NCBI GenBank assembly: GCA_964035545.1
Contig: OZ037766.1
Span: 4,330,722 to 4,394,721 of the forward strand
Source of the DNA: Bugula neritina
Lineage: Eukaryota; Animalia; Bryozoa
DNA: 64,000 nt
Reading direction: 5' to 3'
This document shows, one piece after another, positions 1,112 to 38,979 of this stretch. Under the pieces are notes generated by a model that did no database searches, was not told where the DNA came from, and saw only the letters and a list, made by a program, of their open reading frames with translations. Each line of letters starts with the position of its first letter. Position 1 is the stretch's first letter. Made by a program: the position numbers and the translations under genes.

Positions 1112-4100
1112 ATGGACGGAATACTGTGCTTATGTTTTCGTTGCTGGTTCTTTATAGTTACTGTGTCCATCTTTTCACCAGTACAAGGTATGTTAGACAA
1201 CATCTTGTAAAAAGTTTATACATTTTCTATGTAGTTTGTATCTAACAGAATATTTAAATTGAATCATTTTTGTATTTTTATTTACCAATTGATACACAAA
1301 GTATGTTTTTTATTTCAAAGAGATTTTGAAAAGAAATTGTTATAAATTTGATTTGTACTAAAAATATATAATTATATAATCATTATTTACCCCACTAAGA
1401 GACTTCCTGTTGTATGAGTGGATTTCAAGTATAGAAAAAAGTAATATGTGCTAAGGGTATATCGTATATCCTATTAGTAACAAAATATTATATGCTTCTG
1501 GTGTTCTTTTCCAAGCATATAGATGTACAAGTAAACGCTTAGTAGCCTAATGGTGCATTTATACTTAACAGTTTTGGCTACCTTAGTATCCAAATCAAGC
1601 CTAACGTTTAACAAATTGAGATTCAGGCAATAATTCCGTAAAATAAAAAGCTATAGCAAATTGGGTTGTTTATAATTTTGATTGAACAAACAACATTTTC
1701 TGTAAATGATGCGTTGCATAATAAATGTATAGCCTCAGTCACTATTCAGTCCTTCTACCTTTCAATTTTTCAGAATATATGATTCGATAAAAAGAAATAG
1801 GCCCTATAGCTGTATAACAACCTAATTCGTACAAATTAAGGAGAAACTAAACTAAGTGAATGAAATGGTCTTGTTGGTAACTAAAATTCCTACAAGTTGC
1901 AAAAGCAGATAAATGATAGAGCTAAGTTTTTTAATTGCTATTACTAGTAGTTATCATGTGCAAAAAATAGTGTCTTCATGGGAATATTAAACTCTCTATC
2001 TGTTACTCTTTTTATGAATTTAAAGGAATAACCTGCGAATGGGAATCGAGTCTGGGATTACTAGATCCTTATGTGAGGTACGGTAGTGTGTCAACACTCT
2101 TTGTAACCAGTGAGAATGAGTGTAGAGCTCAGTGTATGCAGCAGACATCATTTATTTGTGCCTCAATAAACTACAGACATGACGATGGGGAGTGCCAACT
2201 TTTGGTAGAGAATAACCAGACTGCCTACGCTGTACACAGTAGAGCTGGTGTCTCACGCCAGTCAAAATATTCTGTTAGACCGAGGTGTGCCGGTAAGTTC
2301 AAGTTGTGCGTCACTTTACTAAATAGCTCATAATATACTAAAGTCTATTAGCTTCTTCAGGAAACTATATAGGTGTTTTTCTTGAATGGTTGCATTGTTG
2401 GAAGTTCTAGAAAAAACTAATATATTATTCAGGTATCAAAATTATTACTGTGTTATATAATGCAGTAAGCAGCAAATTTAAAGAGACTTTTATATATACC
2501 TTCACCATTTTAGTCAGAAGTTTTCAGTGCAGGCTTAAACATACCTTGAGACCATTTAAGAAATACAGTTATCATGCTCTACAATACTGAATATGAAGCT
2601 CAATAGTAACGTTTCAGTGCTGCTTATAATGAACGTCTATAGCTAAGTGCTGTTGCTCTCGCACAAATATAATAAGAACTTTGTAAAAAAGCTATAATAA
2701 CTTTGAAACAACCTGAGACAAATAGCGTTGTTGAAAATATACATTACAGTGTGTCACTTCCAATTAAAGTGGCAGTCATATTGAAATACAAGTACATTCT
2801 GGTATAAATTAAGGTATCCGTTAGCCAAGTGACTCATGTATGCAAAATTTTTGAAGCAACTAAATTTATAACAAGCTCTTGTAATTAACAGGAATATGGC
2901 AGCCATGGACGGCCAAAAGAGGTTTTCTTCAAAATACTGTCATCGGAATGGGGAATAAATACGACACGAAAGGAACACTGTATCTTAAAAGCTGTATGAG
3001 TTTCTGTTTACAAGATAACAATGTCAACTATACCTGTAGCTCAATAGTCAAGTCAATCTACTCTTATGTTTGTGATTTTGTTGATAAGAGATCAGACCAC
3101 CCAGGAGTTATTCTGGAAATTTCTACAGACTATCAGTATTTTGACCTGCCTCTTTGGTATTCAGGTAATAAATGTGCAATCTTTATAATGATTTTGTATT
3201 TAATTTTCCATAGAATGAACTTTGAAAACAATTTTTAAAAGATTTTAATTTTATTATAGTCCAATTCAGCTGCAGTATACATAATTATTAAAGGCATTTC
3301 AATGTTTTTAAAAAAGTGTAATATATAATGGCACACATACATATCACCGTTAGGAACAATAAAAAAAAGAAGATTTGTATTTCCAACAAAATTATACATC
3401 ATCTTAATGATTCTAAATCAAATCTTATCTACATGATTAATGATTTTCACTCACTCAAATAAAATGACAAAGTTTTCAATATGGTTTCACAGGTCCTTAG
3501 TTAGTCAATTAGTATGACATTCCTGTTAATATAGACATTACAGCCTTATTCTAGTGTCTAGTTAAAGTTGAGAAATAATATTTTTTAACTATCTTTATTA
3601 CAAGGTATATATGCAAGGATATAAGTATTAAGTGTATGTTACAACTGGACTCTCCAATATGAAACTATTGCATATAATAACTGCTTATAATATAAGCAAT
3701 GTCTAAGACTCTTTCTAGATAAAACCAGGCTGGTAAAGTCAGATTAATCTGACTGTTTGAACTAATCAAACTTGCAATTAGAAATTACAATTTATATATA
3801 ACTGGCAAAATCCCTTTTTACTAGCCACTGAGGTGTTTCCATTGGTTGAAATGTAGTTTAAATTAACTCAACAGCTGAATGAAGTTAAATATTGGTTTTC
3901 TATATTTATTTTTACACAATTCAACTTTTTAAACTTGAGTCTCTGCAGTTTATTTTAATAATGTAATAACAAATAGTTTTTATTGCTTTTGAAAAAAAAA
4001 TACTTTATTGTAACAGTTTTGCCTTGAATAATTTTTAAAAACTTGTTATAATTTTATAGACAGTTCTTCAAGTATAACAAATACGAAAATTGAAGATTAT

Positions 4101-7100
4101 GGATCGGGTGCACATGATTTCATGTTACTCTTCAACTACAAGATAGAAGCAGACGGATATTTAGTTGGCTGGAAGTATTTGATTGGTCATTCTACTGACT
4201 ACTGTGACTCATATGCTGCTATCTGGAGACAGACAGGGGAAGGTAAATCTGCTGTATTCGATCTGATTACAGAAACTCTACTCACACCTGAACATGTATC
4301 TACAAGAGGAATCAGATTCCAGTTTGTACAGAACTCTACAGAAGTAGTTAGAAAAGGAGACTTTCTTGCTCTCTATACGGTAAAAAACAACACCTGTTCA
4401 GGCAGTCTTGTTTCATTTAGAGAAAATATACCAACAGATCCTCTAGCTTATATAAGCAGTAATCCTAACAGAAATCGAGGGGACAGACTCGAAGCTTCAG
4501 ATGTTGGCGTACAAACTAGAGCAGTAGCACTGAGAGCCTACATAGCAGGTACAAGCAACCAAATAAGTTCTAATGAAATGTTAACACTCTTATATATAGT
4601 CTACAATATGACTTGAATAGCAGATACAAAGTGAAGAAACGAATGTACTAGTATACTCAATTGTACAGCTATAATGTTGTCTGCTATATTTATACATTTA
4701 CACGTATACAACTTTGCAAAAAAAGGCTGTACTTCCAGCAAAATTTCACTTTAGCTACATTTACATTCTTAGTAGCATTGTGAAAATTCCTCAATCAGTT
4801 TATGGTCATAGTAAGGAGATTTATGTATTGTATGTAGTAAAAGTTTAATAAAAAGCTTACCCCATAACATAATAATTATAACTATAGCATGCAGAAAGTA
4901 TTGCTGCAGGCAGGTTATTGCAAAATAATTGCTAGCTACTTGAATGTGTTGTAGATCTAATAAAATTATTCATCTAGTATTTGAATCAAACCTAATTGGA
5001 TTTATGAGAATTTCTGGCTTTAATTAAACTTTAATTTCAAGCTGTTTCAAGCTATTATATAAGCTGATATTTTTGTGAATAATTTGCTTTTAGAGTTTAA
5101 GCAGGGTTACACATTATATTTGCTAGGCCTTCTTATTCTTGCAGTTAACAGTTTAAAATAAATTGCCCTGTAATTTTCTCTTTGACAGAAAACCTGAAGC
5201 TTATTGGCAACCCATTATGTGTCCACACAAATCTGTCAGCAGGGCAGATTAGAATTACATGGAAATTTCCAGCTACTGCACCCAATCAGGAGCTCACAAC
5301 TACACATTTTAAAATAGAATGTTCAGACAACTCCAACTTCGACATAATAATAAGTTCTAAATTAGTTTCTATAGACTACAGAGAGACTGTGATTAGCAAT
5401 CTGAATATACAACAACCTCACTATGCTAGAGTATCTACTGTGGGGAATTATAACAGTGAAGAGTTAATACAAGATGTCTATACAGTCAACTCTCTGTTTT
5501 GTGCAGGTGCAGTTCTGTTATGACGTAAAGTTGCTGATATTCTTTCTGATAAAAATGCATGTTCTATAATGAATATTTTAAAAATACGATAAAATGCGCA
5601 TTTCAAAGCTTCAAAACCAAGTTGAAAAGTTGTTTATTTTGTTATTGTTTCAGAAAGAGGCAGGGTGGTATCAACTAATGCGTTTATAACAAAAAGTGAG
5701 GTTTTACAACCAGAAGAAGAAATAACATTTACTGTATCTATCCCTTCATTGGTAAGTTTTCTGAGGCATTTATGAAGAATTGGATTTATCACACCAATGA
5801 ATTTTCTTGAGTACACTTGATAATTTTTTCATAATCAAAAATTTCTGACATCGATAGTAATACCTGCAGTTTTGCTCTAAATAGCATAAATTAGAGTTGT
5901 AATATATACAGTTGTTATGTTATTTGGGTACATGGGCTATAGTTTATTTATAATATTTATTTAACTAAATAATTTTTAGCTGCGTGTAGTGTTAAATTAA
6001 ATAAAAACCAAAATTTATACCAGGAAGCTGATGACTGTGTATCCAGTGTTACATTAACTCATGGAAGTGGACAATTAGCCAATCAGAAGAAGTCAGGATC
6101 ATGGACTTTCACTAAACAGCAAGGTGTGACCTTTGAACTGACTATTAAAGTAGAGCTAATAGATGGACATGAGAATATAATATGGCAGGAAGAATATACA
6201 ACTGGTAAGACAGCTTATAGCTCTTAAGAAACATATATGTTGATAAAAATAAAATAATCTGCATGATAAAATGATTAATTGTGCAAATTTAAAAATTGAT
6301 TAGGGAGCTAGTGTTGTTAGTCAAATTATGTTTAGATTTGCTTTGATTGACCAGCCATTTGATTCTGGTCCTACCAGGTGTTGAATTTATATAAATCGCT
6401 TACTTTCACCTTGATTGAGACTCAATAAGCGTAATAGGCTACTCCTACACTACAACTTTGTAGTCTTTGCTATAATTTAGTAGTATATAAATCGTGCAAA
6501 ACTAAAACTTAAACACCCCAGTTTTTGTGAGCTTAAATGTAGATCTCCCTTTCGTTTGATAGCAATTTGCGTGATTTCTCAGATATCTATAAAATAAACA
6601 GACTTAGTGAACGGACAGTAGATAAGTAAATGTAGAAATAGGTAAGAGTTATTTAATGAAATTAGGCATATAGGTGAAGGATTGAATACTGGACTTTTCT
6701 CTTTTTTAACTATAAAATATATAGGCCTACTTGAGGCTTTGAAATAATATGAAATCTGTCAAAAACAAAACAAAAACAATGTTTTGTAGCCTATCACCTA
6801 AGCAGATGTCCTGAACCGCCACATGTAGCAAATACCGAAATCAATGGAAAGGGAAATGATTTCTCCATCAACTCTACAGTATCATACTATTGCCAATGTT
6901 ATGGTCCTGTTGTCATTACATGCGTGCTGGTGGATGGCAAAGGAGAATGGTCTGACAATCCTCCTACATGTGAACTACCACCTCAAAGTATGTGTCTTCA
7001 GAATACTGTAATGCAGATTGCAAAGTGATTTTTCAGTAACAAATGTAGTCAAACAATGGTGTGATTTCATAGCAACACATTTCTCTTTTTTCCTGTTAGC

Positions 7101-8896
7101 CATGCTTAAAGTTGCCTTCAAAAATAACCCAAAAAGGATATATGTATATATAAAGCAGAAAAACATACCTGTCTGATGTATGTAACTCATTTTAAGCCAA
7201 AAAACAAAATTACTACTAGTTTAGTGAAAGATATACTAATGATATTGCTCTAGTCTCTAGTGGCTTGGTTAGGAATGGCCAAGTTTTACAATCCCTCCAA
7301 CACACTAAATATATATATATATATATGTACCTGCTTTATGATTTTTAAGTTTGCAAAAAGCTAACATTTTTATTATAAGTATATAAAATAGTTCCACAGG
7401 TGCGCCGGAAATGTTGCAGGATTCTTTCTTCTTTAAGGATTACCAGTCCAGTTTGAGGTCAAAGGTTAAGCTCATAGGTTGAGGTCACAAGGTTAACCTC
7501 ATATCACGGGCTTTCCATGTACCGATCTCAGATCGATCTCGCTGAGATCGATCTGAAAAATGTGCTCAGATCGATCGTTTTTCCATGAGAGTGTCAGATC
7601 GATCTTGCGAAGTTGCCTCCTCTTAAGTGAAGGATACTTTAAAAGTATAATTTGTTCACCTATTTGAGTGATAAAAGCTACTACTGTTGAAAACAAGATG
7701 GTCGTAGTCTAAAATTTAATTCCAGCTATAAACTATACGCAGCAAAGCTTTCTGTGTATGGTAATTTGGCCAATTTAAAATAATTAGTTTTAATTTCTTA
7801 GCTTGACAGCTTATATAAAATTAATGGCTGTCTTGCAGATTATTAATAAACTTACAGGACTGTTAGGCTTAAAATTACAAAGAAAATAGCTAATGAAACT
7901 AAGTTTTAATAGTCATTTAAATTCAATTTAAATTCTCCTATTTTTTTTTACTTTCTACTGCATATAATTGAGTTTTCTTAATCATTGTACTGAAAGTCAA
8001 AGTTTTGGCATCTGAAAAGGTGGCTATCATAATTATTTAATACTTTGCTTAGTAATTATCAATAAGTTATCATTTTTATTAGCAGACAACATTGTAGCGC
8101 GCAGTCTTTTTCTACTTCTCAGATCGATCTGGCATCTTTCCATGGTCTTATTGACATGAGATCGATCTGAGTTCGAGCTCCACAGACCGACCAGCTCAGA
8201 TCGACTGAGATCGATCTTTGGCGTCTTTCCATGGATCGATCTCAGTGAGATCGATCTGAGATCGGTCCATGGAAAGCCGGTGTATGTTGAGGTCACAAGT
8301 GCTATTACCTAACACAAGCAGGTTTATATGAAAATGTAAACATAATAATTGACAGCACTTACAAGTAATTCCATTATATTCTGAGTATTATGACAAAATT
8401 AATACAAAGCCTATCTATGTCACCAATGTGCCTCCGCAGTTAATCTTTTTGAGATGTAGTAAAATATAACTTATTTCCAGTTTGTTAATTATTACCAGGT
8501 TGGACCATAGGAGTGGCAGCTGGTATCCCGACTAGCTTATTGATAATTCTACTGACAGTGATTCTTATTGTGGTGCTGGTGAGAAGATTATCTGGTACTG
8601 AGTCTAGAGGAAAAAGATCCCAACCTGATGCAGAGTGCAGTAGAATAGAACTGCTACCCACTTCTACGATTGAGGAGAATGCTACACCAGGTTCACCCGA
8701 TGCACCAGATGTACCGAATGCACCCGGTGTATTGTATGCACCAGATGTACAGGATCGACCAAGACAAAGCCTTAAATATGAAAAACTAAATCTTCAAGCT
8801 GCTGTTGATAATCATGACTACGAAAAAGTTAACCAAACTAGAGAACAAAATTCCGTTCACTATGAGAATTCTTCCACATTTATTGACAGCAGGTAA
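1112..8896 (+). CDS. Type I membrane protein, about 765 aa: signal peptide, 2x PAN/apple, uncharacterised beta-rich domain, FN3-like, Sushi/CCP, TM, Tyr-motif tail
   Basis: Nine in-frame exons: 1112-1187, 2026-2292, 2892-3164, 4060-4548, 5189-5506, 5654-5751, 6024-6204, 6790-6987, 8499-8896 (2298 nt). Signal peptide MDGILCLCFRCWFFIVTVSIFSPVQG; PAN motif ECRAQC..FICASINY..ECQL; Sushi CPEPPHVAN..VSYYC..ITC..GEWSDNPPTC; TM GIPTSLLIILLTVILIVVLV-RR. The exon 7 acceptor is the least certain junction. Confidence 0.8.
7505..8282. mobile_element. Non-autonomous DNA transposon (MITE-like, 778 bp) with about 49-bp TIRs and 3-bp TSD TAT
   Basis: Left end cacgggctttccatgtaccgatctcagatcgatctcgctgagatcgatc; reverse complement of right end caccggctttccatggaccgatctcagatcgatctcactgagatcgatc. 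TAT flanks both sides. Many subterminal gatcgatct motifs; no transposase. Confidence 0.85.
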
Positions 8897-9770
8897 AGCT
8901 GATGACAGAGCTGAGCTGTTTGTAAACTACAGAACTTGCTACTAAATAACAGAAATTTTGTATGAAACAATTGACATTTATGTGGCCTGTACGTGCTTGA
9001 AAAGCTATTTTTTAAGTTTCTAGTAACCTAAAAACTGAACTAGCTATTATTTCACTTGATTTCTTTTTTAGAATTTCAGCTTCTAACCTAAATTTCGCAT
9101 TAGATAAAATATTTTATTATAAATGCTATTATAAATTTATCAACATATGATTTATATTAGTTTTTGTTTTGCTTTACAACTAAATAGCAACCCCATCACT
9201 GAGTTAACAATGCACCAATATAGCCAAATTCCTTTTGTACAAGGGCTGGACAACTTGAGTGATACTTTAGTCTATCACAGCCAATAATTTCAATTCTGCA
9301 CAATAGAATTATTTTGTCAATCTGTCAGTCCTGTTCTATTCACTTCAAAACAGCACCAAAGTTCCTATGCAATCAAATTTTGCTAAATCTAAGCAATACT
9401 CAAGCATAGCTCATTACATCTGAGAAAAAGATCATTATTAGTATGTCCATAAACTCTGTAATATCCAGCTCATAGTACACACAGCTGAAAGTGAGTAAGC
9501 AATGTGTTAGCTATGTGGCAGGACCTTCACAAATTATTAAATATACAATGGCAATTTCGTTCTATAAATGTGTTAGATGTGGTTAAACAACATTTTATGT
9601 TTTATGAATATTTTTTTTATACTTTTGAATGCATTTCACTGAAAAACTACACATAAAAACAAATATTGCACACGTAATAGAAGTTGTTACAGTTTATTAA
9701 CAGATATATTTAGAGTAACATATGGCGTGCTAATAAAAATGCAAGAAATACATTAGCATTTAAGAGCTAA

Positions 9771-9830
9771 GTGATAACATCAAGTTGAAATATCCTCTTA
9801 TAGGTTTGTATTACAACTGTCATAAGGCAC
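9771..9830 (-). promoter_or_regulatory. SECIS element (type II) in the 3'UTR of deiodinase-like gene A
   Basis: Minus strand reads AUGAC-AGUUGUAAUAC-AAA-CCUauaagAGG-AUAUUUCAACU-UGAU: AUGA/UGA kink-turn core, about 10-bp helix II, AAA bulge, apical ministem. It lies about 450 nt after the stop, with AATAAA at 9693-9698 (- strand). Confidence 0.9.
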
Positions 9831-10276
9831 ACAATGCCCTGAATGCATATGAGAAATCTCGTAATTTGATTAGCATGCTTTCTGGTACTTCAAAAAATAT
9901 ACACAAATAGGCCATAAAAATGCATATCAAATTGTATAATAATTATATAAAATATTTCAATAAGCAAATAAACATAAACAAACAGTAATTTAATTTTCAT
10001 ACTCTAAATATAATTATATATACTAAAGTTTTAGACCAAACACTTGAAAGTATAATTGAAAATTGATATAAAATAATAATCGTGCAATCAATGCTCAAAA
10101 ACAAGTATAGCATTTTTGTTTGAATAAACTAATAGTTATTGATTAGCCTATAACATTAAGAAATTTATTAGATATTATTTTGCTGTGTTTCGGGGGTTTG
10201 AAAATTCTATAACTATCATTGCTATTTCCCAAAAAATAGTTTCGCTATAATTACTAGTTTTTTAGCAACATGCAAG

Positions 10277-12845
10277 TTAATTACATTTCGCAACAAATGA
10301 TTTTATCCACTCCTGGAGTCTACTGAGGTCATATGACAGTGGCCCAGAACCCCCTTCATATACCACCGTACCGTCTAGTACAACATACAGTCTCTCTGGG
10401 AAAGCTGCGAACTTTAAACTCACGGAGTTGTTCATCATGTCCACCAAGATTGGGAACTTCATATTACATTCTGATTTCATGTCGGCTGCAACCTGAAGTA
10501 AATCATGTGCTAGCACTGTAAAAACTAGAAACTTATATCATTACGCATCTATCTGCCTTAGTTTAAGTCAACATGGTGTTATAATTTAAATATAATATAG
10601 ATATATAATTGGTATTGTAAAATAATTTTGCCCCCCCACTGGGATCGAACCCGAGACCTCCGGCTTGCAAGCAAGTGTGCTAACCATTACACCACGGAAC
10701 CCCTGGGTAGACTCATCACTACAGGTATATAATTTGTATATCAAATCTTATCATGACCATATAAATAAATATACCTGCATTCTTTCACTGCAACTAGTAG
10801 CTTGATCTATACCTTTAAACTCAAGAGGATGAGCTTCTGCAATGTAGACTGCAGCAAAGTCCATCGACTCTTTATATTGGTCGGCGAGATCACAGAAAAC
10901 CTGCATCTCAAGCCTGAAAAGTAAAATCAGAAGTCAAGACGGCATAACTAATTGGAGAACGAGCAAGAGTATAAGTAGGCACACTGCATGTAAGCTGAGT
11001 ATGTGTTCTCATTTCCGTTCACCTAATATTTTGAAAAGTATTAGCAGTTGCTAGAGCTACACTAGATTATAAGAACTAATAATTAATTTCACTTTAATTT
11101 AGTTGACTGCTACCAAACTGAAGTTTCAAACAAAACCAATTATTACTATCTTGGTACGTGTGAGTACTTGAGTGAATCGTCAAAACATATAAGTTTGTTA
11201 GTCAAAAATAGAAATAATTAAGAAAGAATATTTTACAAAATTCAACATCATGTTAACTGCAGTAAAAAAATGAAATGCATTTGCTGAAGCTGATTGCCAT
11301 GTTCAAACTGTCCTTTTTTTGCTGACTTTTGCATTTTAGCAGTTGGCTTATTTGAAAGTCAATGCGTAGTGTTACAAAATATTACTGGTTACCTGCTGTA
11401 TTTCAAAAATGTAAGTGTTACGTGTAGCAAACAAGTAACAAATAGCTAATGATTATCTATGTATCAAAGTACAAGAAATTAAAATGTTACATACAAACTA
11501 CATAGCTCATCACAATCAAATTTTCTAAAAACCTACTAAAAATCAACATTGAATATTCAACAGTTTCTGGTTTTCAAACAGCTAAAAGTGTAAATTAATT
11601 AGTCATCATTTATGTACATGTAGCTAATATTATATTGGCTTAAGAATACCTGAAAGGGTGTCAGGTATAGCTGCCAAAGTTCAACACCAAAGGTCTGCCC
11701 TTTTTAGCAAATGACAGAAGTGTTGAAACTTTTTTAGACTCTAAGTCTATAACATCTCCATCAGGAGCAGGCAACCCTTGGTATGCTTCTTTATAAATAG
11801 CAGTTATGAAGAATTTGTAAAAAAACTGCATCTAAAAGGTATATAATAATATATCATTATATTCTAGGATTATTAGAGTATATAATTCTTCTAAGACCTC
11901 ATATACGTATTTGTAACAACAACGTTTATTGGCTGTTAAATTTAAATCTTTGCTTGAAACTGCCTTTTTAGACTTTAAAACTTTTGAACGCATAAAAATT
12001 GTTCAAATCATCATTACAGTATACCAGTTTTCAACTTTTTCATACCCATATAAATAAGATCATAGTTTATATCAAATGCGAAAATAGTCTGAATTTACTA
12101 TTAAAACCTAAACTAATTTTTGCTCACCACCCTAGAATGATGAAATACTCGTCTCATTGCTTTCGGATTCGCAGAAAATTCCTTCTTGAACAAGTTATTG
12201 GAAAAGAAGTGCAGCATGATTTCTAGAATATAAATAAATGATCTCTACAGCATCAACAAGAGTTTACCAGGTACTTTTCAAATTAAAGACGCAATATATA
12301 TTAATCACAGTCTAGCCGGAGTCAGGTAACACTTCATTAGGTATCTATTGCTCATTAAACCAACTATAGAGGTAGAAGATCGAGTGCCAACTTGCCTACT
12401 AACAGCTTGCTCTACTCTTGACACAACCTTAACAAATGATTACTGCATGTGTATACCAGTATATTATATGCTGTATGTTAGTATACTTACAAAAAGTATT
12501 GCATTATTTCTCAAAGGTTTGATTTGAACAAACGTTAAATTAAATTTCTAACTTTTTCTTTAAGTCCTTCCAAATAGCCAACGGGATAGCATAGTGTAGG
12601 TATCTTCCTCTATTGCCACTAAATAACCTACTTTTCAAGCTTAACATAAGTAGAATAGTCTTACCTGCAACCCTTTGGTTTACCAGTTCTTCCAGCTTGT
12701 GGAATCCAAGATAATCAGAAAGGAAGTATATAAAGTTGATAGCAAGAAATACAGCCAGCACTCCCAGTGTTTCACATATAGCTATTAGCAATCTTATGGA
12801 AACATGCCAGGGCTGACTGGTGTCTTGGGCTGCTGATACCCCCAT
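10277..12845 (-). CDS. DIO: Iodothyronine deiodinase-like selenoprotein A (270 aa, Sec at TGA 11661-11663)
   Basis: Exons 12665-12845, 12128-12222, 11650-11831, 10775-10913, 10277-10492 (813 nt, phases consistent). N-terminal TM; APDGDV; RPLVLNFGSYT(TGA)HPF; VYIAEAHP; PILVDMMNN..AFPERLYVV..YEGGSGP..Y; SECIS downstream. Confidence 0.92.
10626..10725 (-). mobile_element. tRNA-derived repeat (SINE-like head or tRNA pseudogene) in intron 4 of deiodinase A
   Basis: Minus strand GGTTCCGTGGTGTAATGGTTAGCAC...CGGGTTCGATCCCA has A and B boxes, but the acceptor stem does not pair. A diverged copy lies at about 32983-33075. Confidence 0.7.
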
Positions 12846-15800
12846 AATCTCTCGCTGACTATCAACAAACATTACCACAAGTTCACAGGGTATACATAAT
12901 AATGAAGCAACTTTAGTAGCTTGAATAGTTTACAAATTTTAATGATCTGTGTAAAAAGGAAGAGCAAGAAATTGCTTTAAAAATTATATAAATATCATTT
13001 TCTATGACAATGGCACTTTTTCTCTCTACTTGGTGTAATTGCCTTTTACAGAAACTTGCAGCTAGTTTGTTATAGCCATAGAGTGTGTACCAGAAGATAG
13101 AATAGGATATGTGAAAAAAAACTTTAAATTTTAAAAAGATATCTTAGCCTACCTCTTATTTAGAAGAAGCTTCTACATGCTATGAATCTGCAGTACGGTG
13201 TTCTATCTCCAGGCACATGCATGCAAACTGAGATGTTGCGTTGGAATAGTTCAATAATAGATTCCTGACTAATGAGGCGTGAATGACATTTTGCATATAG
13301 CATTTAGTTCAACAATTTTGTATATATAACTTAGTGCCAGCCTCGTATCAAGACATTTTTCATTCTATTGCTATTTCGCCACCGCAGCATGCGACGAAGT
13401 TTATTATGCGTATGGGTGTGACCTTTAGCTCATAGTTTAGTTTGGTGTTCTATTTTAGAACTTGATTGCTTTTTCCTAGCCAGACAACTGCTTATTATGC
13501 ACAATTTTGCTAAGACTTCTAGCAATTCTGCATCTATATATCTATGTTTTGCTGCAGATTATGTATAAGTACTTATGTGTATATAATTATATATATACAC
13601 TTAGTTCATATTTGAAAAGTCCTTTATTTAAAAAAAGCAATACTCCTTTTTAGAAATAACTTACTTTATAAATATAAACTGCAACATAATATTAGCTTTA
13701 TCACCAGAGAGAAATGATACTTCGTTATGCCTCAAATTTCTATCTAGACTAACATATAAATTATATAGCATACATGCTGCCAAGCTACATATAATTTTTT
13801 TCTTATTATAGCATGTCTTTTTTTAGAAAACTTCTACTTTTGTCTATTAAACTATGGAAGACAAGTTACTAAAAGAAAGACAACTTCTATTCAATTTAGG
13901 CAAAAGGTGTAGTTGGTAAATTTTTCAGCTGTAAATTCAATACTAGCAACAAACAAAAATTTTTTCTAGCATTACGCGCTATTTAAGATTAAATTGGTGT
14001 AATTTAGACATGTTTTCTAGTATGAATAGCCCTTGATGCTGTGGGCTGTTTTCGATAACCTTTCAACAACTGAAAGGTTTAGCAATGAAAGTGTTCTTAA
14101 AAGTGAATAGTATAATATATTATTAAATATGCCGCACTATATCTGTGATACAAGACACATCATATTTGCGCATAGTAATTTATATATTGATGGTAAGGCT
14201 GATGAGACATCTTTATGAAGACTTTAGCCATCAGTATAGTCATAATATTTAAAAACTACTATATAGTGATGGTCTACCAACACATGGCTTTGTCTTGAAG
14301 CAAATAATGCTTATGAGAGACTTGAGTAAACACTAGTTTTCCAACAGCTAATAGTAAGTAAATGAAAAGGTTCGGTATATTATATAGTTATTGTCACATG
14401 CTGTAACAGCTGAACTATGGAGTGACAGGTTGAAGTGTTATGATATGCAAGTGTCTGAAAATGGTACGCTTTTTGGCATACAAGTATCATAGTTTATCTA
14501 GTCTGACAATAGAGTCAGTACAATAACAATCTTACTTGGCACGCTGAGTTGGACGCTGCATACATATCATGTGAGTTGCCAGATGCTATATATTTCTAGT
14601 TTCTAGTAGTAACTTGTGTAAGCATAGGGCCATACAACGAGGAGTTTCTGCATGCAGGTCCAAATATTTGAAAATCCACACACACAATGCATTAGTTGTG
14701 AGTGCAAAAAGCTTATTAGCTAATGATTTATTGCCATTTAACTTTGCTGCTTGCCTACAGGTGTTTGTTTTTTAATCTACATCATCTGTAAAGCGACTTA
14801 GATATTATGGAAAATGCAAACTATTTGAAACTGTTTTAAATCAGTTCGCTAAAAGTTAAAACAAGAATTGAAATTAAAAAAGTGTGCTCGCTAATGAAAA
14901 CCAACCAATTAGATCAAACTCACACGAGCTTTCTGCACTCTCCGCTCAGCACGTTATCCCCATTTTTGGGCTAGACGGGTTTCCAAGCATGTGGCCCTTT
15001 GCTAACAGTGTCGCAGAAGAACAATAAGAATCGCAAGGTATGTGTTGTTTTCAGAGAAAGTTTTAGCCCATTGTTTTGGCTAGTAATGACCTTACATGAG
15101 AGGAAGAAGGAAAGAGAGAAGCAATGTTTAAATAAGTTAATAAGAAATTTACATTTTGTCAACCAAATATTATAGTTACATAGGACTTATAGTTGAATAA
15201 GTTTACAATTTAAAAGAAGGTTAGCCATTTAAGTAGAAGTCTGAAGTTTGTTAGTTAAAGCTTTTAAGTAGCTCAGATGGCTTCTGAATGTTCATGAATA
15301 ACTAATTAGGGTCAGCTTTGCCATTTATATTGTGTTTTAGAGTTTTGCGCTTTTATAAGATGAACAAACATTCATGCCCGTTTATATACATCTTGCAGAA
15401 TGTAGTCATCCTCGGTATGCTTGCAATGGTAATAAGCAAATATAACTAGGTGATCCCACTAAATACATATAATAAAAGCATAACAGGCTATTCTAATGCC
15501 CCTTTTTTTTTAAAATATAAACAGCTATAGCTTTAACAATCTAGAGAGAAGCATGAGCTTAAAATAAGTAGATATTTTGTCATAATTTTAGTTTAAGCTT
15601 GGCTTATGTTCGTGAGATTTATTAGCGCATACTGGAGTTTTCTCCTCAACATAAGAAAATACTGTAATGGATTTTCATCCCCTGTTGTGCTGGAAAGTTC
15701 TAGAATGCATTGCATCATTATTACTAACTATTGCATTATTATTATAATTATACTCTTTTGTGTAGCTTTTATGAATGCCTTCAAAAGGTTGTTATTATAG

Positions 15801-16657
15801 CTAAACTCTTGGGTTATTGAATTATTCATTTTTCTTTGTCTACTTTTCTTTTGTTTCTGTCAAGCTTAACTTTCTTCTGTCTGTTGGAAAATTCTAGAGT
15901 GTGTATGAAAGCAGGCGAGTTACAAAGAGATATGTTCAGCACTTAAGTTTCATTCAACCCACAAAGTTACTACAATACGTTCACTATTGCTTATATAACT
16001 AATATTTTTTCTTATGGGAGCAATAATTATGGTCAGTTGTAATTAATTTTCTATTTCTTGCTATTTAAAATGTTACAATAAGCAATTAAATAGCTTCATT
16101 TAATACAACTGCAACTTTATAGGATAAGATTGTTTTATTTTGTAATAAATCTAAGTAGGTTGTCAATAACGTGATAAGCACTTCCCTGGATGCAATGTTT
16201 ATTGATCTATTTATGATTGTCCAAAAATGTGGACATGACCTGGAGATGCCTATCTCATGATGGCATGTATCTGGAAACAGGGTCACTGCTATTTTGTCAT
16301 GCAGTTGCTACATAATATATACATTCCTAGTCACGAGACTTTCAAATCTCAGAAAACATTTATATATACAAAAACTCAATTTATACATATAGAAATAAAC
16401 ATTTATTTATCACTCTATAACAACTTAATGTATAGTTAGCCTACATAAGTTATTGTTTGTAAAGTGATATACCTTGTAAACAAGAATTTTTACATTCAAA
16501 TAATTTCATAATAATTACATCTTGATTAATTCAGGTTATTTAGCCACTATTGTGCAAAGCAGTGTTTTATAGCATTGTTTTTAGTAAAAACTTGTACCAG
16601 AAAAGCATGTAAGAGCCAAAAACAATATACCATACTTGGATATTATTGCAAAACATA

Positions 16658-16720
16658 GTGGTAACATCAAATTGAGATAGCCTGTTGCCAGATTTATATC
16701 TCAACTGTCATTTTTCTCAC
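16658..16720 (-). promoter_or_regulatory. SECIS element (type II) in the 3'UTR of deiodinase-like gene B
   Basis: Minus strand reads AUGAC-AGUUGAGAUAU-AAA-UCUG-GCAA-CAGG-CUAUCUCAAUU-UGAU: 10-bp helix II, AAA bulge, ministem capped by a GNRA loop. About 195 nt after the stop. Confidence 0.92.
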
Positions 16721-16913
16721 GGATGTTTTGGAAATATCTAGGAAGTATACTTGTTGGTTAAATTGCTTTATCAATAAACAATATATGAAAATATAATATT
16801 GTCACGTAGCTACTAAATACTGATATTCATAATGTAACACTTGTATGTAAGCTATGTACTAGTAAATGTAGTAAACTATAGAAGCTGAATTGCATCCTTT
16901 AATTTAAGTATGT

Positions 16914-19428
16914 TTAAATGCTAGATGTGTAATTCTGAATAAATGCCTCCAGCTCCTTGATACTGTAGAAGAATGGCCCAAAACCCCCTGCATACACCAC
17001 TGTACCGTCTAGTACCACATACAGCCTCTCTGGGAAAGCTGCGTACTTTAAGCTCACGGAGTTGTCCATCATGTCCACCAAGATTGGGCACTTCATATTA
17101 CAATCTGATTTCATATCTTCTGCTGTCTATAACATGAAATATATACACCGAATGCAGTATTCCATGCGTTAGCACCAACTAACTAATTGAATTACAATTG
17201 CAGGCAACAAATAAATTCATACAAGTGGAACAGTTTTTAGCGATTCAAGTGTTATTCTGCAAACTCTTGCAATAAACATGATCATAATTGAGCAAATAAA
17301 TGTTCTAACAAAGCATTTGTCAGTTCAACGTAGATCTTAAATACTTTGTCTTTCAAAACTTACAAATGGCCAATTAATCAAAGCAAATACTTTGCATAGT
17401 AAATGTTTGAATTTTATTTGACTTTATATAAAGTTACTTCTGATTCCAATTTATATTTTGCATTACTATAATATATATTTACATTCTCGAGAGCTTGGAC
17501 AATTACACCAATTGTCAATCCATTAATTATTTCAAAGTTATATTTTTTTCAATATAAGAACCAATGCAACATATACCTGCATTCTTTCACTAGCAGTGGT
17601 AGCTTGGTTTATTTCTTTATATTCAAGAGGATGAGCTTCTGCAATGTAGACTGCAGCAAAGTCCATCGACTCTTTGTATTGGTCGGCGAGATCACAGAAT
17701 ACCTGCATCTCCCCTCTCCACAATAAAACACTCAAATCATTAATAAAATGAGGCAATGCTAACACAAAAGTAATACAAATGTATATATATTACACATTTA
17801 CTACCAAAGGGAAAAAGTTTTTATAACAACAAGATTCTATTTGAAAATCTTTTCTTCTCTTTTAAAGCAGAATATAGATTTTCAACTGCTATAAAATACA
17901 GAATAAATATCAATTGCAAAACTACAGTTCATAAGAAAAAAGGGTGTGTCCAGCAGTAAATGGTAAATTGGGTTTAAAATTTACCTGAAGGGGTGTCAGG
18001 TATAGCTGCCAAAGTTCAACACCATAGGTCGGCCTTTTTTAGCAAATGATAGAAGTGTTGACACTTTCTTAGATTCTAAGTCTATGACATCCCCATCAGG
18101 AGCAGGCAACCCTTGATATGCTTGTTTGTAAAGGGCATTTGTGAAGAGTATATATAACCCTTGACTCTAGAATAGATATTTTTGCATTGAAGTCGTCTGA
18201 CATTCTTCTACAGACATGCATGAAATGAACACTCATAATAATATGTTACGCATTTTCATGTTTCAATTAATGATAGAAATAATGTAGAATAGGAATAATG
18301 TAGGCTATTTGCTTTAGTGTTGACACTACAAATTGGCAATTTAAGTTCTCCCTTTGAACAAATTTAGTATGTAGTATATTTTATTTAAACTTCACTCTGC
18401 ATATAGTCTTGCTAATTTATATCAACCCAAACGCTTGATAATTTTGCTAATATAACTATATGCACATGCATGCACATAAGTTATTAAGTTGCGAAAAGCA
18501 TGTATAGTAATAATATACACCTAAGGTACATGTTTTGAGCTATATTATTTTAAAAATTTAGGCGTTATAAAGTTAGAACGCACAATGAGTATAGTAACTC
18601 CTGCTACGTTCTTATTTCAACCGTAAATAAATAAAATTTATGAGCTTGCAGAAAAAATGCCAAACAAGTAAAACATCTAAACTTGTAAAAAATTTAGTTT
18701 TTCTCAGCAATACATTGACTTTGTTATATACCTAATTGAATTGAGTAAACATGGGTTATATAGTAAACTTACAAAAACGCCAGAATAGTGGCAGAGATAT
18801 CTAACCCAAGTTTTAGCATCACTGCTGAAATTCTTTCTCAACACATCATTGGAGATGACGCTAGCTATGAAATCTATAACATTATCAGTAATATGTAGCA
18901 ACTTTAACAGTGATGTAATACAGCATGCACACTAAAGTTTTATGCTTGCACAAATAACATCGTCTACCTAACTTATAGAAAATAGGAACATGGTTAAAAA
19001 CTATATTTGTATATTTTGCATGTCTATCTATTATCTACAGTTTAATTATCTAAAAGAGCACGCGCATATATATATAGTTATTACTAATTTGCAGGTTGCA
19101 AGACTTAATAGCTGTTTTTCTTTGCAACTATTTGTCTCTAAAACTTGAACTTAGCCAAATTTTGCTTAATTCTGCACCAATTAGAGCATATGTTTATTAC
19201 ATGCAGTCAAATGCTTGGCAGTTCTTTACCTGCGACCAATTTCTTACCTCCTACAAGTTGGTTTGCCGAATCTTCTAATTTTTTAAATCCAAGATAATCA
19301 GAAAACAGAAAAACAATATTCATAATAAAGACAACAACTAACAACCCGAGTGTTTGACTTAAAGCTAATATCAGTCTGATGGAGATATGCCATGGAGGTT
19401 GAGGCTCTATCGTCTCTGTCACCCCCAT
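16914..19428 (-). CDS. DIO: Iodothyronine deiodinase-like selenoprotein B (271 aa, Sec at TGA 17996-17998)
   Basis: Exons 19248-19428, 18773-18873, 17985-18166, 17577-17715, 16914-17126 (816 nt), with the same phases as paralog A. RPMVLNFGSYT(TGA)HPF; VYIAEAHP; CPILVDMMDN..AFPERLYVV..YAGGFGP; SECIS downstream. Confidence 0.92.
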
Positions 19429-23169: not shown

Positions 23170-26100
23170 ATGGATGATGATGGTGTAGTTGAAGTGAAAC
23201 CAGATGTTTTCACAGACCATGATTTAGCTAAATGTGAGTTTTGTTAGCTCATGAATTTTTTACAATATTGCTCTATAATTTTTCTGATTTTATCACTGTG
23301 TATATTTTAATTTGGGTTGATTTTTGTATCTAATTATCTGTACGGCTTTGCAGCCACTGCACCAACTCGTACCAGAGCTGACTCTGAGTCAGCGAGCAGA
23401 CAAGAATTTGTTATAGATCTCACTAAAGCTGTGCCTAACGACTCTCTGCCGCAGATAAACTCACCGGCAGAGCAAGAGGTTAATAGTTAACAGCTATTTT
23501 ACTCTCTCTACTACTCTTTACTAACTTTTATTCAGCTTGTAGCTAACTATTTACTAACTTACTACTTACTCTTTATTAGCTGTCCACTTACTCTTGAGTA
23601 ATAGTTTTCTACTTTTGATTCTTTAAATAATATATTATTTTACATTTTAATGCTGCTACAGGAATTTACTGGTAACTCTACTTAAGCACAATCAGAATAT
23701 GCTTTGCAAAACTAACTTCCGATATCTCTATACGCACGTAGAGCAAAATTCAACCCAACAATAAAATATAAAATAGGCAATAAGAATCTATTTCAAGTGT
23801 ATTTTTAGTTACTGGAATGGCATTGAATTAGTTTGTTACTCATGGAAACTGATCCAGAAATATATTCATTGAAAATGTTATTTTTGTTGTGGCATTTTTT
23901 AATAACCTTGTCATAGATATTTTCAGGTACAAATGTTCTTTTGTTCATGTAGAGTGAGAAATTATTTTTTTTAGATTATTGAAAGAGTCAACAAGTCTTT
24001 TAGTCGAAGTTCTTCAGTTACGGTTTCTTCTTTTACGGCTGTCATAGAGAAAGAGATGGCGCTCTACGACACTGAAGACATCGTGACTAAAGTCCACAAG
24101 CCAGAGAAAGTGGTGAAACCGATGGAGTCATTTGTGATCTACACTGTCTCTACTAAGGTTGACATGTAACTTTCTTCTATGGTGTTTTCCAATATAAATA
24201 TAGCACCGATATAAATATAGCACCAATATAAATATAGCACCAACATAAATATAGCATCAATATAAATATAGCATCAATATAAATATAGCACTGTTTCATA
24301 GTATTTCTTGCTTCATGTGTTGCACTGTAGGATGTTGATTGGTGCACTTGGCTCAAATTTGTTTTACTGTTTGCAAGTGTAGCCAAGCTTAAAGCTTGTA
24401 ACGAGATGTTATCATAATACAATTGGAGGTAGGCGCATTAATGGCAAAGATGAAAAAAGCCTGAATTTTAGATTAAAAATGTAACAAAAAAGTCATGCTT
24501 TCACAAGAGTTTCAACCCACTCCCTAATATTATTAATAATTATTAATAAATTATTAATAATATTAGCCAAAAATTATTAATAAATTTAAAAAACTTGGGC
24601 TATGAAAAAGCTTCTCTACCACTTCACCTAGATGCACCTAAATAGTTTGTATTATAATATACTCTACATGTTTATATAAGGCAGTTTTCACATATAAATA
24701 TTAGCCAGGATAAATGAAAAACAGCACATATATCTGTCACAGTCATTTTTGAGATCAATTCGCACAAAGTTCACACCAGTTTACGTATTTCCCTTGCACT
24801 TGCAGACGACCAGAGAAGAGTTCAGTGAGCCAGAGTACACGGTGAAACGGAGATACAACGATTTCCTGTGGCTTCACGACCAGCTGTCGCAGCAGCACCA
24901 CCTGTTGATATTACCTGTGAGTCAAATGAGATGCTCAACCTTGCATATTACTTCTCTGTAATTGAATCTCTCTCGAGTTAGAGTCAAGTCTCTTCAGAAT
25001 ATCTCTCGATTTAGAGTTGAGTCTCTTCAGAATATCTCTCGAGTTGGAGTCGAGTCTCTCTTGAGTTAGAGTTGATTTTCTTCAGAATACCTCTCGATTT
25101 AGAGTCAAGAACCTGACTAGACATGCTAATTTAATATTTTAAGATTTGAAAGCACCCAACCATTTGGCTACAGCTTTTTCTAGAATTATGCTATCGTGTA
25201 GTCGGCACCTCTACTGGTCACAAGACGATTACACACCATAGAATAGAATGTTCGGTAATTTGTAAAAGTGTTTTTTGCCTCGAGTTTGTAAAATTGAGCT
25301 CTCTTTTGACCGAACTATATAGTGTGTTACTTTCTGTATGAAGTTAGAGTAAGACCTCACTGAATATAAACTGTATTGTTTGATGTGGAACTTCAAGTAC
25401 CTACGTGCTCATTAATTATTAATGTGACTGTATTTAGTGTTATGTAATGTTACTAGGTATTTCACCGTGTGATTAACCTTAGAGGTAAGCTGCATTAACA
25501 TCACTAGTTAGTAATTACGTGACATGAATCACTCGTCCTTTTACTGCAATCACATATGGCAATGGAATGTTTTCATCACCTCTCACCTGTAACATATCAA
25601 CATGTAAACAATATCCTGTGACAGTTTTGCCAAGCTGGCTAGTGCAAGTGCACTGATGCAGCATGGTGTACGACATACGTGGAAAATGATGCTACCTGAC
25701 AAATCTTGTTATCTCACACACTGCTTAGTGGTACAGAATTTGTAGTTAGTTTTGGTTTATAACTTGTTTTAGTATACGGGTTTGGGGCGTGTTTGCTGTG
25801 TTTCGCAAGCAGACAAATTCTGATGCTGCAAATATTAAGCAACTGCAACTTTGCATTCTCCTTGTGTAGTTTCCTCTGCAGAAACACACCCTTTGCTGCC
25901 AATTGTTTACTGTTTGCTGTCTACTGCAGCCTCTACCTGAGAAGCAGCACCTGACGCTGGACAGGTTTGACAAACAGTTCATAAGTTACCGGGAGGCAGC
26001 GTTGTGCCGGTTCGTCAGTAGACTGTGTCAGCACCCTCTCTTCTCTTACAGCAAGTTCCTGCAGGCCTTTCTCACCCTTGAACCCAGTGTAAGTGTGTTT

Positions 26101-29100
26101 CTGTAAGTGTAGGGAAGGTGTAAGTTTGTTTCTGTAAGTGTAAGTAGAGTGTCAGTGTGTTTCTGTAAGCGTAAGTAGAGTGTAAGTGTGTTTCTGTAAG
26201 TGTAAGTAGAGTGTAAGTGTGTTTCTCTAAGTGTAAGTAGAGTGTAAGTGTGTTTCTCTAAGTGTAAGTGTATTTCTGTAAATGTAAGCATATGACTGTA
26301 AGTGTACGTATGTGCCTTATGTAAGTGTAAGTGTGTCCTTTGTAAGTGTAAGTATTTGTCCATATGTGTAAGTATATTGGTAAGCTAGAGCCACGTGGAG
26401 TGAAACTTGAAGTATGAAACCATATGCTGTTAAAATATGCTGCGGGAGTCACCTGTTAGTCCCTTCCAGGTGCTGAGTATTTTGAGATGGGTGCTATTAT
26501 ATAGGTGAGAGGTGTGTGCCAGGTGTAATGTGGTGTGTGGTGAGCAGAAATATATTTTTACAAAGTTGTGTAAAGCTACTTGTAGTTTTGTACTACTGAA
26601 TGACAGGTGATGCCCTCATATTCTCTCTATATAAAGCCTACCAGTATGAAAGTTGATAGTTGTACATGTTGTAGTAGCACATCATATACACCACATGCTG
26701 TTAGCATACTCTGTTTGTTTCTCTTGCACTGATCTTTTATCTGCTTACCATTTAATTTAGGAAAATGTAAAATAAAAGTGTATAATCTATGAGATGTTGT
26801 CCTTTGAAGCATATGACAGATATAGCCTCTACTTCAAAGGAGAGCCCACATAGCTAGTTTTACTATGAAAAGTGTTACATTGTGAACTATATATAGTCAC
26901 TAATGAGGCTTTAAAATTAATGTTACTTGCTATGTCAATTTTGTAACATTCAAGTTAGTAAACAACTTCTCTAGCATGCATAATTAACAAATAACAGAAT
27001 ATCTGTAAATATGTAACTCCACATTTCAATTTTTTAACTTTACATATTTTTATTTCGAAAATATTATCCATTTTAACTCTTAAATGGGAATTTTCTCCTC
27101 TTTGATATGTGAAAAACCATGTGTTTTTATAAAAGCTGTGTTTTAAGCTTTGTTTAATACAAATATCTCTAACTAAAAGTTGTCTTCCCTTGCCACTATA
27201 TGTACTGACTTCTCAGAGTGTAAATTATTACATTGATTCAACCTTGACCTGTGGTTTTGCAGGCATTTAGCAGGTATAAAAGGCAGAGCAGTAGCTCTAC
27301 ACCACTGAGCATTGTCTCCTATCTCCAGTACCCCTACAGTTCCTATAAGAACTCAATCACGCCCAGCTACGAGCACCAGGCTCTCTATAAGTACGCTGAC
27401 AAGTTTGGTGAGAAGATGGCTGCCTTAGAGAAAATTACTCACAATTTAGTACAGCGTCAATCTGGTGGGTGGAGTTTGCATAAATTGCTGCAAGCATTAT
27501 ATAAATATCTTGCTATATTTTAATTGTACATTACGACATTTATTTACGTAATGTCATTTGCTTTGCGGATTGTTTAGTAGTGTTGAATGCAATCAGTTGT
27601 ATGTATTTTATAGTTTTACCTGCGGAGGCTGCCATCTTTAGACCACATAAAAGTATTACAACACTGTTTTTTATTTTATTTTGGTTTTGCTATTAAATAC
27701 TAAACGTGGTAACTGGTGCTTACCGTACTGTTGAAGTTATCATAGTTTGTTAACAGTTGATGTACACCAACTGCACACAATTTGCATACAGCAACTTATA
27801 TCATATGCATTTGTTTCAAGTTAACTTTTAAAAATTGTTAGCCTAATGTTATAAAACTAATATTATTTTATAGAATATGCTGTGTGCAGCATGAGTTCAT
27901 AACTCCATGTTGTTTCAGATTATGCCAAGTCTATGGCGGCTTACAGTAGTGCATATAACCAGTGGGCATCAAGTGAAACAGAGCTGGCCTCTCCCTTGCA
28001 AGCAGTGGCTGAGCTGTATGATCACATTCTTATCACTGTTCATGAACTGGTAAACTATGCCATCTTATAATCATGCTATTAATTGTCTTTGATAAAATTA
28101 AATTAATTTTGTTCTAACTATTAAGTAAATCATGAGTCATTTGAGACATACAAGTAAAAGAATCTAATTTCTCTTCAAGTTGAAAGACTACAGATTACGT
28201 TGCGTGAAAAAAGCTGTGATTGAACTCCATGCAGTTTTGTACAATGTGATTTAGTTTTACTTTTCATGTATTTTTCTATGTCATATATTGTAATAATATA
28301 ACATCTATAGTAATATATAATACAATGTGACATTTATTTTGATATATAATATAACATATATAATATAACATCCATAATATTATATAATATAATATAACAT
28401 AATATATCACGTGATATTAAATATTTCAGATAGACCGTACACCTATCACTGTCTCTTTATCATTCAAGGAATACTATCTGTTTTCAGCTGTTATAAAGGT
28501 AGGCTATTTAATATCCATTACGATATGTTTTTTATGACATACAGTAACGTAATGTGGTTACTAAATCAATTATTGATATTAATTACTGCTGAAAACTTTC
28601 ACATGGAGACATTCTCGTGCCAACTCATTCTAGTTACTTTGACTAGCTTGCTAAGTCATTATGTTATTTCACGCTTTTATTATGTTTACACATTTATATA
28701 ATAATGTTGCACTTACTTTTGCATTATTTCAAGTTTACTTGAAATCTATTTTTTTTAATAATTTTTGTTTCAAGTTATGTTTCTTCTTTGTTAGTCAAGT
28801 TTAGACAAGAGAGACTACGAGCAATACAGGTTTGAGAAGTCTCTAGCAATGGTCAAAGGTCAGGGGGAGTCTTCTAATAATCCCCAATCTCCAGCCTTGA
28901 GCGCCTCGGTAATGACTGGATTTTTATAACACATACACTTTATTCAGCAGTGTTCAACCAAATTACTCAAGCTTTCAGGCAAATTGTAGATTCATAAATT
29001 TAAACTCGAATGTTTTTTACATGTTCAACTTATGTTAATGTTATTTACATAGGAGATTTTATTGCTTTCTAAATTATTGTGATTCTTGTTCATCTAAATA

Positions 29101-31960: not shown

Positions 31961-38979
<7,019 letters not shown>

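What the first reader, a model, noticed from the sequence alone, without database searches (positions are those of the whole stretch)
9771..19428. Tandem pair of deiodinase-like selenoproteins with a rewired active site (SYT-U-HPF): candidate new dehalogenase subfamily
Seen: both genes have an in-frame TGA (11661-11663; 17996-17998) in RP(L/M)VLNFGSYT*HPF and each has its own SECIS, so both should encode Sec enzymes; ORF callers miss the catalytic exon. Established: vertebrate DIO1/2/3 have S(C/A)T-U-P(P/S)F, then YIxEAHxxDGW, a loop ending in a second His (H219, mouse Dio3 numbering), and Lys/Arg in GG(K/R)GP of Dio2/3. Seen in both paralogs: C168 is Tyr, P171 is His directly after Sec, DGW is absent with the deiodinase insertion about 7 aa shorter (EAHPLE(F/Y)K(G/E)I(D/N)QAT), H219 is Ala, and the last motif is GG(S/F)GP. 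S167, T169, Y197, E200 and H202 are kept. Exon 3 differences between paralogs are mostly synonymous, so both look functional. Inference: the Sec/proton-relay core is retained while the substrate-facing and recycling residues are replaced. This suggests a different halogenated substrate (for example bromo- or iodo-aromatics) or chemistry, with the new His perhaps standing in for the lost one.
Basis: partly seen in the sequence, partly recalled or inferred. Interest (0 to 1): 0.92.

Follow-up and report, generated by a model that had tools for sequence, protein, structure and literature searches.

The report
Bryozoan deiodinases with remodelled active site
A marine moss animal's only thyroid-hormone-deiodinase-type genes (three neighbouring copies) encode selenium enzymes with a conserved, reshaped substrate pocket, so they may strip iodine or bromine from molecules other than thyroxine, but this is untested.

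Summary
Two intact five-exon deiodinase-family genes have in-frame TGA and SECIS. A third copy lies just left of the window. These three are the only deiodinase genes found in this 216-Mb genome, most likely Bugula (bryozoan).

A distant relative (40-68% identical per exon, same three introns, own SECIS) shares aromatic-Thr-Sec-His-Pro and the 7-residue-shorter loop. On the last exon alone the group forms a clade (98/95). So this is a real, conserved variant.

His219-to-Ala leaves human DIO1 normally active (PMC9141512), and the relative keeps His219 beside the new His, so a stand-in role is unsupported. The GG-x-GP residue varies freely outside vertebrates, DGW is often absent in invertebrates, and S[YF]T-U is common in bacterial homologues. 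The paralogues' catalytic exons look homogenised by gene conversion, so they are not independent evidence. The genome keeps a thyroid-receptor-type gene.

Best reading: an ordinary selenol dehalogenation mechanism with shifted substrate preference (0.45), against a divergent iodothyronine deiodinase (0.35). No RNA or enzyme data. The scan had earlier noted only the gene A SECIS.

The parts
12665..12845 (-). Gene A exon 1: start codon and N-terminal hydrophobic (membrane anchor) segment
   Evidence: 19-residue hydropathy mean 2.29
12128..12222 (-). Gene A exon 2 (linker)
   Evidence: 87% identical in related sample L009
11650..11831 (-). Gene A exon 3, Sec exon, ends in FGSYT-U-HPF
   Evidence: (PF00837 35.9 bits)
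11661..11663 (-). In-frame TGA (Sec) of gene A
   Evidence: a contig of DNA run X1 spans it with no other letters
10775..10913 (-). Gene A exon 4: helix 1, strand 2, Tyr197/Glu200/His202 equivalents, shortened loop
10796..10828 (-). Gene A 11-codon loop after EAH (17-18 in most animal relatives); no Trp; Ala at the His219 position (10799-10801)
10277..10492 (-). Gene A exon 5 with FPERLY and GGSGP, to stop
   Evidence: 48.4 bits; best PDB hit mouse Dio3, E 2e-10
9769..9832 (-). SECIS element of gene A
19248..19428 (-). Gene B exon 1 with hydrophobic anchor (alternative donor at 19230 also in phase)
18773..18864 (-). Gene B exon 2 (linker)
   Evidence: conserved in L010
17985..18166 (-). Gene B exon 3, Sec exon
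   Evidence: (36.8 bits)
17996..17998 (-). In-frame TGA (Sec) of gene B
17577..17715 (-). Gene B exon 4 with shortened loop; entered by an atypical GAG acceptor
16914..17126 (-). Gene B exon 5 with GGFGP; Cys at the distal (Cys239-like) position, which A and C lack
16658..16720 (-). SECIS element of gene B
   Evidence: (orthologue in L010, 31.7 bits)

Best explanation
A three-gene, probably bryozoan-specific branch of the animal iodothyronine deiodinase family. Each gene makes a membrane-anchored thioredoxin-fold selenoenzyme (UGA recoded by its own SECIS). It most likely works by the normal deiodinase chemistry: the selenolate takes a halogen from an activated aromatic ring and the retained Ser/Thr-Tyr-Glu-His network delivers the proton. 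With Tyr/Phe in place of the proximal Cys it cannot form the usual selenenyl-sulfide, so it is reduced by an outside thiol or turns over slowly, as Dio2 does. The 7-residue-shorter loop removes the Trp and Asp that are modelled to hold the outer ring of thyroxine, and His replaces a Pro that lines the pocket next to Sec, so the preferred substrate probably differs from vertebrate T4/T3 (hormone analogues or smaller iodo-/bromo-aromatics). Shown: gene structure, conservation, clade, selection. Inferred: Sec insertion, chemistry, recycling, substrate.
For: PF00837 hits and Dio3/Dio2 as best PDB matches. tRNA-Sec in the genome; SECIS in all copies with covariation. Purifying selection in the Sec exon, dN/dS 0.06-0.25. 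Same motif set in a relative 40-68% identical per exon; clade 98/95 on an exon that holds none of these motifs. Among database relatives Sec+1 is Pro in 98 of 103 and His in none; the loop is 16 or longer except one pair at 12. Roles of Trp207, Asp211, Pro171 and Cys168 from PMC7506546 and PMC9141512. Non-synonymous changes between copies fall mostly in the loop. Precedent for a shifted substrate in an invertebrate deiodinase: amphioxus enzyme acts on TA3/TA4, not T3/T4 (PMC8143656).
Against: No assay, no RNA run, no model of the whole domain. These are the only deiodinase genes found in a genome that keeps a thyroid-receptor-type DNA-binding domain. Loop Trp is missing in 73 of 171 relatives and His219 in 40 of 171. 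The Trp/Asp roles come from simulation of Dio3; Asp211 is Dio3-specific. Halogen-bond calculations suggest only heavily brominated aromatics reach the needed strength (PMC7144113).
Confidence: 0.45

Rival explanations
1. They are the lineage's ordinary iodothyronine deiodinases, diverged in sequence but still acting on thyroid-hormone-like ligands of the animal's thyroid receptor.
For: Only deiodinase genes in the genome; thyroid-receptor-type gene present. Catalytic residues kept. H219A and loss of the proximal Cys are tolerated in DIO1 with DTT. An otherwise canonical gene has SCT-U-HPF (L022) and another has a 12-residue loop (P0082), so each change alone fits a canonical frame. Tandem deiodinase clusters are common in invertebrates (PMC3473315).
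Against: The three changes are fixed together across a deep split and surround the pocket; no characterised iodothyronine deiodinase with this combination was found in the papers searched. The receptor's ligand-binding domain and ligand were not examined.
Confidence: 0.35
2. They have left aryl dehalogenation and act as one-Sec peroxiredoxin-like reductases of peroxides, hypohalous acids or haloamines.
For: The fold derives from peroxiredoxins (PMC11592359); the shortened loop is the deiodinase-specific insertion; weaker look-alikes of the loop exon are GPx and AhpC/TSA (scores 0.79-0.84).
Against: The deiodinase-specific Tyr-x-x-Glu-Ala-His and Gln218/Arg225 positions are kept; the top three look-alikes (0.93-0.95) are deiodinases; scores under 0.9 are leads only.
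Confidence: 0.12
3. The S[YF]T-U motif came from a bacterial deiodinase-like gene by horizontal transfer.
For: S[YF]T-U-PPF without His219 is common in bacteria; the last-exon tree cannot reject grouping with one bacterial subgroup (p-AU 0.50).
Against: Each exon scores as well or better on an animal profile than on a bacterial one (Sec exon 42.8 vs 21.3 bits, last exon 73.8 vs 59.1, loop exon about equal); N-terminal anchor, introns and eukaryotic SECIS; bacterial loops are longer (20-21), not shorter.
Confidence: 0.04
4. The TGA is a real stop or the exon is skipped; the genes are decaying or make truncated proteins.
For: No RNA evidence available; SECIS scores are below the Rfam gathering cut-off; gene B has a weak acceptor.
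Against: TGA at the Sec position in six genes from three samples, open and conserved frames downstream, dN/dS well under 1, covarying SECIS, tRNA-Sec.
Confidence: 0.04

Closest known systems
Vertebrate iodothyronine deiodinases DIO1/2/3 (PF00837; PDB 4TR3, 9H48)
   Same: N-terminal anchor, NFGS-x-T-U motif, Tyr197/Glu200/His202, ERLY motif, SECIS-directed Sec; best PDB matches.
   Different: Tyr at Cys168, His at Pro171, loop 7 residues shorter without Trp207/Asp211, Ala at His219 (His in the distant relative), no Lys/Arg at 275.
Invertebrate deiodinase-like proteins (molluscs, crustaceans, corals, amphioxus)
   Same: Tandem clusters, FPERLY-type motif, variable GG-x-GP residue, frequent loss of DGW and His219.
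   Different: These nearly all keep Cys (or Ser) at Sec-2, Pro at Sec+1 and loops of 17 or more; single changes occur apart (L022 His+1; P0082 short loop) but not the combination.
Bacterial deiodinase-like selenoproteins (Acidobacteriota, Planctomycetota, Chloroflexota and others)
   Same: S[YF]T-U motif with no proximal Cys; His219 mostly absent. Function unknown.
   Different: Pro-Pro after Sec in the set sampled (fixed by my pattern), longer loop (20-21) usually with Trp; the window's exons fit the animal profile better.
Amphioxus non-selenoprotein deiodinase (TA3/TA4-specific)
   Same: Precedent for an invertebrate family member that does not act on T4/T3 (PMC8143656).
   Different: It has Cys, not Sec; its sequence was not compared here.

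Membership tests
Iodothyronine deiodinase family (PF00837) | Profile match above the curated cut-off | tested here: met
   Sec exon 35.9/36.8 bits, last exon 48.4 bits, cut-off 27
Iodothyronine deiodinase family (PF00837) | Catalytic Sec/Cys at the end of the NFGS-x-T motif, with recoding signal | tested here: met
   TGA in place, SECIS, tRNA-Sec; Sec incorporation itself not shown
Iodothyronine deiodinase family (PF00837) | N-terminal membrane anchor | tested here: met
   Hydrophobic 19-mers, mean 2.29 in A and B (simple hydropathy only)
Vertebrate-type DIO1/2/3 | Proton-relay core Ser167, Thr169, Tyr197, Glu200, His202 | tested here: met
   Present in A, B, C and the distant relative
Vertebrate-type DIO1/2/3 | S(C/A)T-U-P(P/S)F motif | tested here: not met
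   S[YF]T-U-HP[FY]
Vertebrate-type DIO1/2/3 | Omega loop with DGW, 17 or more residues, ending in His219 | tested here: not met
   11 residues, no Trp; Ala in the window's genes, His in the distant relative
Vertebrate-type DIO1/2/3 | Reductive deiodination of iodothyronines | not testable with these tools
   Needs an enzyme assay
Bacterial deiodinase-like selenoproteins | Descent from the bacterial group | tested here: inconclusive
   Profiles favour animals; last-exon tree cannot reject one bacterial sister group
Bacterial deiodinase-like selenoproteins | Long (20-21) Trp-containing loop | tested here: not met

The most novel reading that the evidence does not exclude
A bryozoan lineage has turned its whole deiodinase complement into selenium-dependent dehalogenases for marine organohalogens (brominated or iodinated phenols, tyrosines, indoles or diphenyl ethers), with the His next to Sec helping halide release or selenol activation. 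This would be an animal deiodinase branch dedicated to non-hormonal organohalogens.
Probability: 0.2. Interest if true: 0.8.

Novelty: new variant of a known kind. Interest (0 to 1): 0.55.

Why it matters
What invertebrate and bacterial deiodinase-like proteins act on is an open question. This clade is a natural multi-site variant of the parts of the enzyme whose roles are debated (omega loop, proximal Cys, the Pro after Sec), with a relative that differs at His219, so it gives a direct test of the loop and recycling models. If it removes bromine, it links animal selenoenzymes to marine organohalogen turnover in a phylum known for brominated alkaloids. If it still acts on T4, the loop Trp is dispensable, which bears on the Dio3 binding model.

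Tried and rejected
Folding the loop exon alone gave a helix where a strand is expected, so it was not used. The only sequencing run found was DNA, so splicing and expression are untested. Rfam missed the SECIS of copy C; it was found by eye and supported by folding and identity in a related sample. Alignments mixing exon pieces with a full-length protein misplaced the pieces; the first was used only to collect candidates, the second was dropped. No named bryozoan protein came up in three homologue searches. No paper on bryozoan deiodinases was found. Three of the four non-clade false-looking hits of the metagenome pattern and one bacterial-type hit were chance matches (L016, L017, L019, L020). 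The source organism of the distant relative could not be identified. Rejected: His stand-in for His219; GG(S/F)GP as diagnostic; two paralogues as independent support.
Full report
Observation. The window is AT-rich, intron-containing animal DNA. Both genes are on the minus strand and splice in frame over five exons: A at 12845-12665, 12222-12128, 11831-11650, 10913-10775, 10492-10277 (270 aa) and B at 19428-19248, 18864-18773, 18166-17985, 17715-17577, 17126-16914 (268 aa). Exons match PF00837, and the last exon's best solved relatives are mouse Dio3 and Dio2. B's fourth exon is entered through a GAG acceptor, also present in a related sample; this needs RNA confirmation.

Sec recoding. Rfam SECIS_1 hits lie 3' of A and B and of their orthologues and a distant relative. 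All score below the gathering cut-off. On six copies, 97% of cells pair and 8 of 13 pairs change on both sides; slid controls give at most 2. I named the structure from these sequences, so this leans in its favour. The genome has a tRNA-Sec (79.9 bits). Sec insertion is inferred, not shown; the only run found is DNA.

A third copy, and nothing canonical. The Pfam family, a canonical invertebrate deiodinase and a motif pattern each find the same three loci in the 216-Mb genome. Copy C lies at about G000:C2:4324213-4328301, just left of the window and beyond an inverted gene. It has SYT-U-HPY, the same short loop, GGQGP, and a SECIS-like hairpin identical in a related sample. JGI contigs named after AY690838 hold orthologues of all three; that accession is the Bugula neritina mitochondrial genome (PMC2678162). 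So the window is most likely Bugula or close kin (inference).

Selection and gene conversion. The Sec exon is under purifying selection (A vs B: 12 synonymous, 3 non-synonymous; dN/dS 0.06-0.25 over all pairs). The loop exon is less constrained (5.5 and 6.5), with changes mostly in the loop. Synonymous distances between paralogues in these two exons (0.06-0.44) are no larger than between orthologues, while the last exon of C against A or B is saturated. The simplest reading is gene conversion of the catalytic exons, so 'seen in both paralogues' is one observation.

Independent evidence. A profile search over 1.8 billion representatives led to genomic contigs of another organism (L013, L014; three more by pattern). 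It is 60-68%, 40-45% and 48-55% identical in the three catalytic exons, has the same three introns and a SECIS, and reads FGSFT-U-HPF with an 11-residue loop. Aligned to an animal profile it shows exactly seven gaps in the loop and keeps the His219-equivalent. On the last exon, which holds none of these motifs, the six sequences form a clade at 98/95 (68 columns only). Its source is unknown; another bryozoan is my inference.

Which departures are special. (a) GG-x-GP: free outside vertebrates (Q, M, L, P, I, V, T and others). (b) DGW: loop Trp absent in 73 of 171 measurable relatives; three DGW-less ones read at DNA level keep SC[TS]-U-PPF. (c) His219: absent in 40 of 171, and human DIO1 H174A, the same change, has normal activity (PMC9141512). 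With the relative holding both histidines, the stand-in idea has no support. (d) Cys168 to Tyr/Phe: rare among the mostly animal relatives (Cys in 94 of 105 motif matches) but present in at least 120 bacterial loci (110 Tyr, 10 Phe, selected by my pattern). DIO1 without it works with DTT but not GSH; Dio2 lacks it and turns over once or few times. (e) His after Sec: none in 103 database proteins, once in an otherwise canonical intronless gene outside the clade (L022). (f) Loop of 11: shortest seen; only one pair at 12 comes close. The signature is therefore (d)+(e)+(f) together. Counts come from pattern matching on redundant sets and are rough. Dio3 numbering rests on the cited papers, profile alignments and my recall of the sequence.

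Mechanism. Ser167, Thr169, Tyr197, Glu200, His202, Gln218 and Arg225 equivalents are kept, so halogen abstraction by selenolate and protonation through the Glu network should be intact (inference from PMC7506546, PMC9141512). In the Dio3 simulation Trp207 shapes the loop, Asp211 halogen-bonds an outer-ring iodine, Pro171 lines the Sec end of the pocket and Arg275 holds the carboxylate. All four differ here, which points to a more open pocket less tuned to thyroxine. Recycling cannot use a proximal Cys; the distal Cys is present only in B; a Cys eleven residues after Sec is present in five of six genes and is a weak candidate. Against a change of substrate: these are the only deiodinases found, and the genome keeps a gene whose DNA-binding domain matches thyroid receptor best (69.7 bits against 54.5 for the next class). 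Some bryozoans make brominated alkaloids (titles cited in PMC7230173), but I found no such link for Bugula. Fish and bird deiodinases are reported to debrominate some diphenyl ethers (PMC7144113), so debromination would not be new chemistry for the family.

Origin. Exons fit an animal profile better than a bacterial one, and anchor, introns and SECIS are eukaryotic. The short tree cannot exclude one bacterial group as sister. Convergence on the bacterial Tyr/Phe state is more likely than transfer.

Verdict. A real, apparently undescribed variant clade of the deiodinase family; no paper on it turned up. The name 'new dehalogenase subfamily' is fair as a sequence clade, unproven as a function.

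Noticed in passing
G000:C2:4324213-4328301 (L007 3214-7302, minus), SECIS near L007 2930-2982: Third deiodinase copy C outside the window, separated from A by an inverted gene; its SECIS is missed by Rfam but is identical in a related sample.
   Followed up: yes
window 10615-10725: tRNA-derived repeat (SINE-like) in intron 4 of gene A; about 1000 candidate matches in the genome at 83-91% identity, some in inverted pairs about 225 bases apart; absent from the orthologue in L009.
   Followed up: partly
window 40142-40498, 48456-48806, 56590-62358 (+): At least three tandem MFS transporter genes with similar first exons (weak PF07690 hits); by recall they resemble FLVCR/SLC49. A link to the deiodinases was not tested.
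   Followed up: no
window 1971-8896 (+): Multi-exon single-pass membrane protein gene with PAN-like, fibronectin/Ig-like and sushi-like pieces (read by eye), lying between copies A and C; synteny kept in L009.
   Followed up: no
window 23975-30440 (+) and 32627-38617 (-): A sorting-nexin-like gene (PX/BAR-type exons, by eye) and an amnionless-like membrane protein gene with a Thr/Ser-rich stalk (by eye).
   Followed up: no
L022 (JAAUYG010204154.1) 1352-1381 (-): Intronless, otherwise canonical deiodinase with SCT-U-HPF: His after Sec arose separately from the window's clade.
   Followed up: partly
   Followed up: partly
L157 1162-1655 (-), G000:C1 near 34.66 Mb: Thyroid-hormone-receptor-type DNA-binding domain in this genome; ligand-binding domain not examined.
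   Followed up: partly
database proteins P0028, P0128, P0230-P0338: Many predicted deiodinases in the protein collection carry Trp at the Sec position, evidently TGA read with a different genetic code; these are probably Sec.
   Followed up: no
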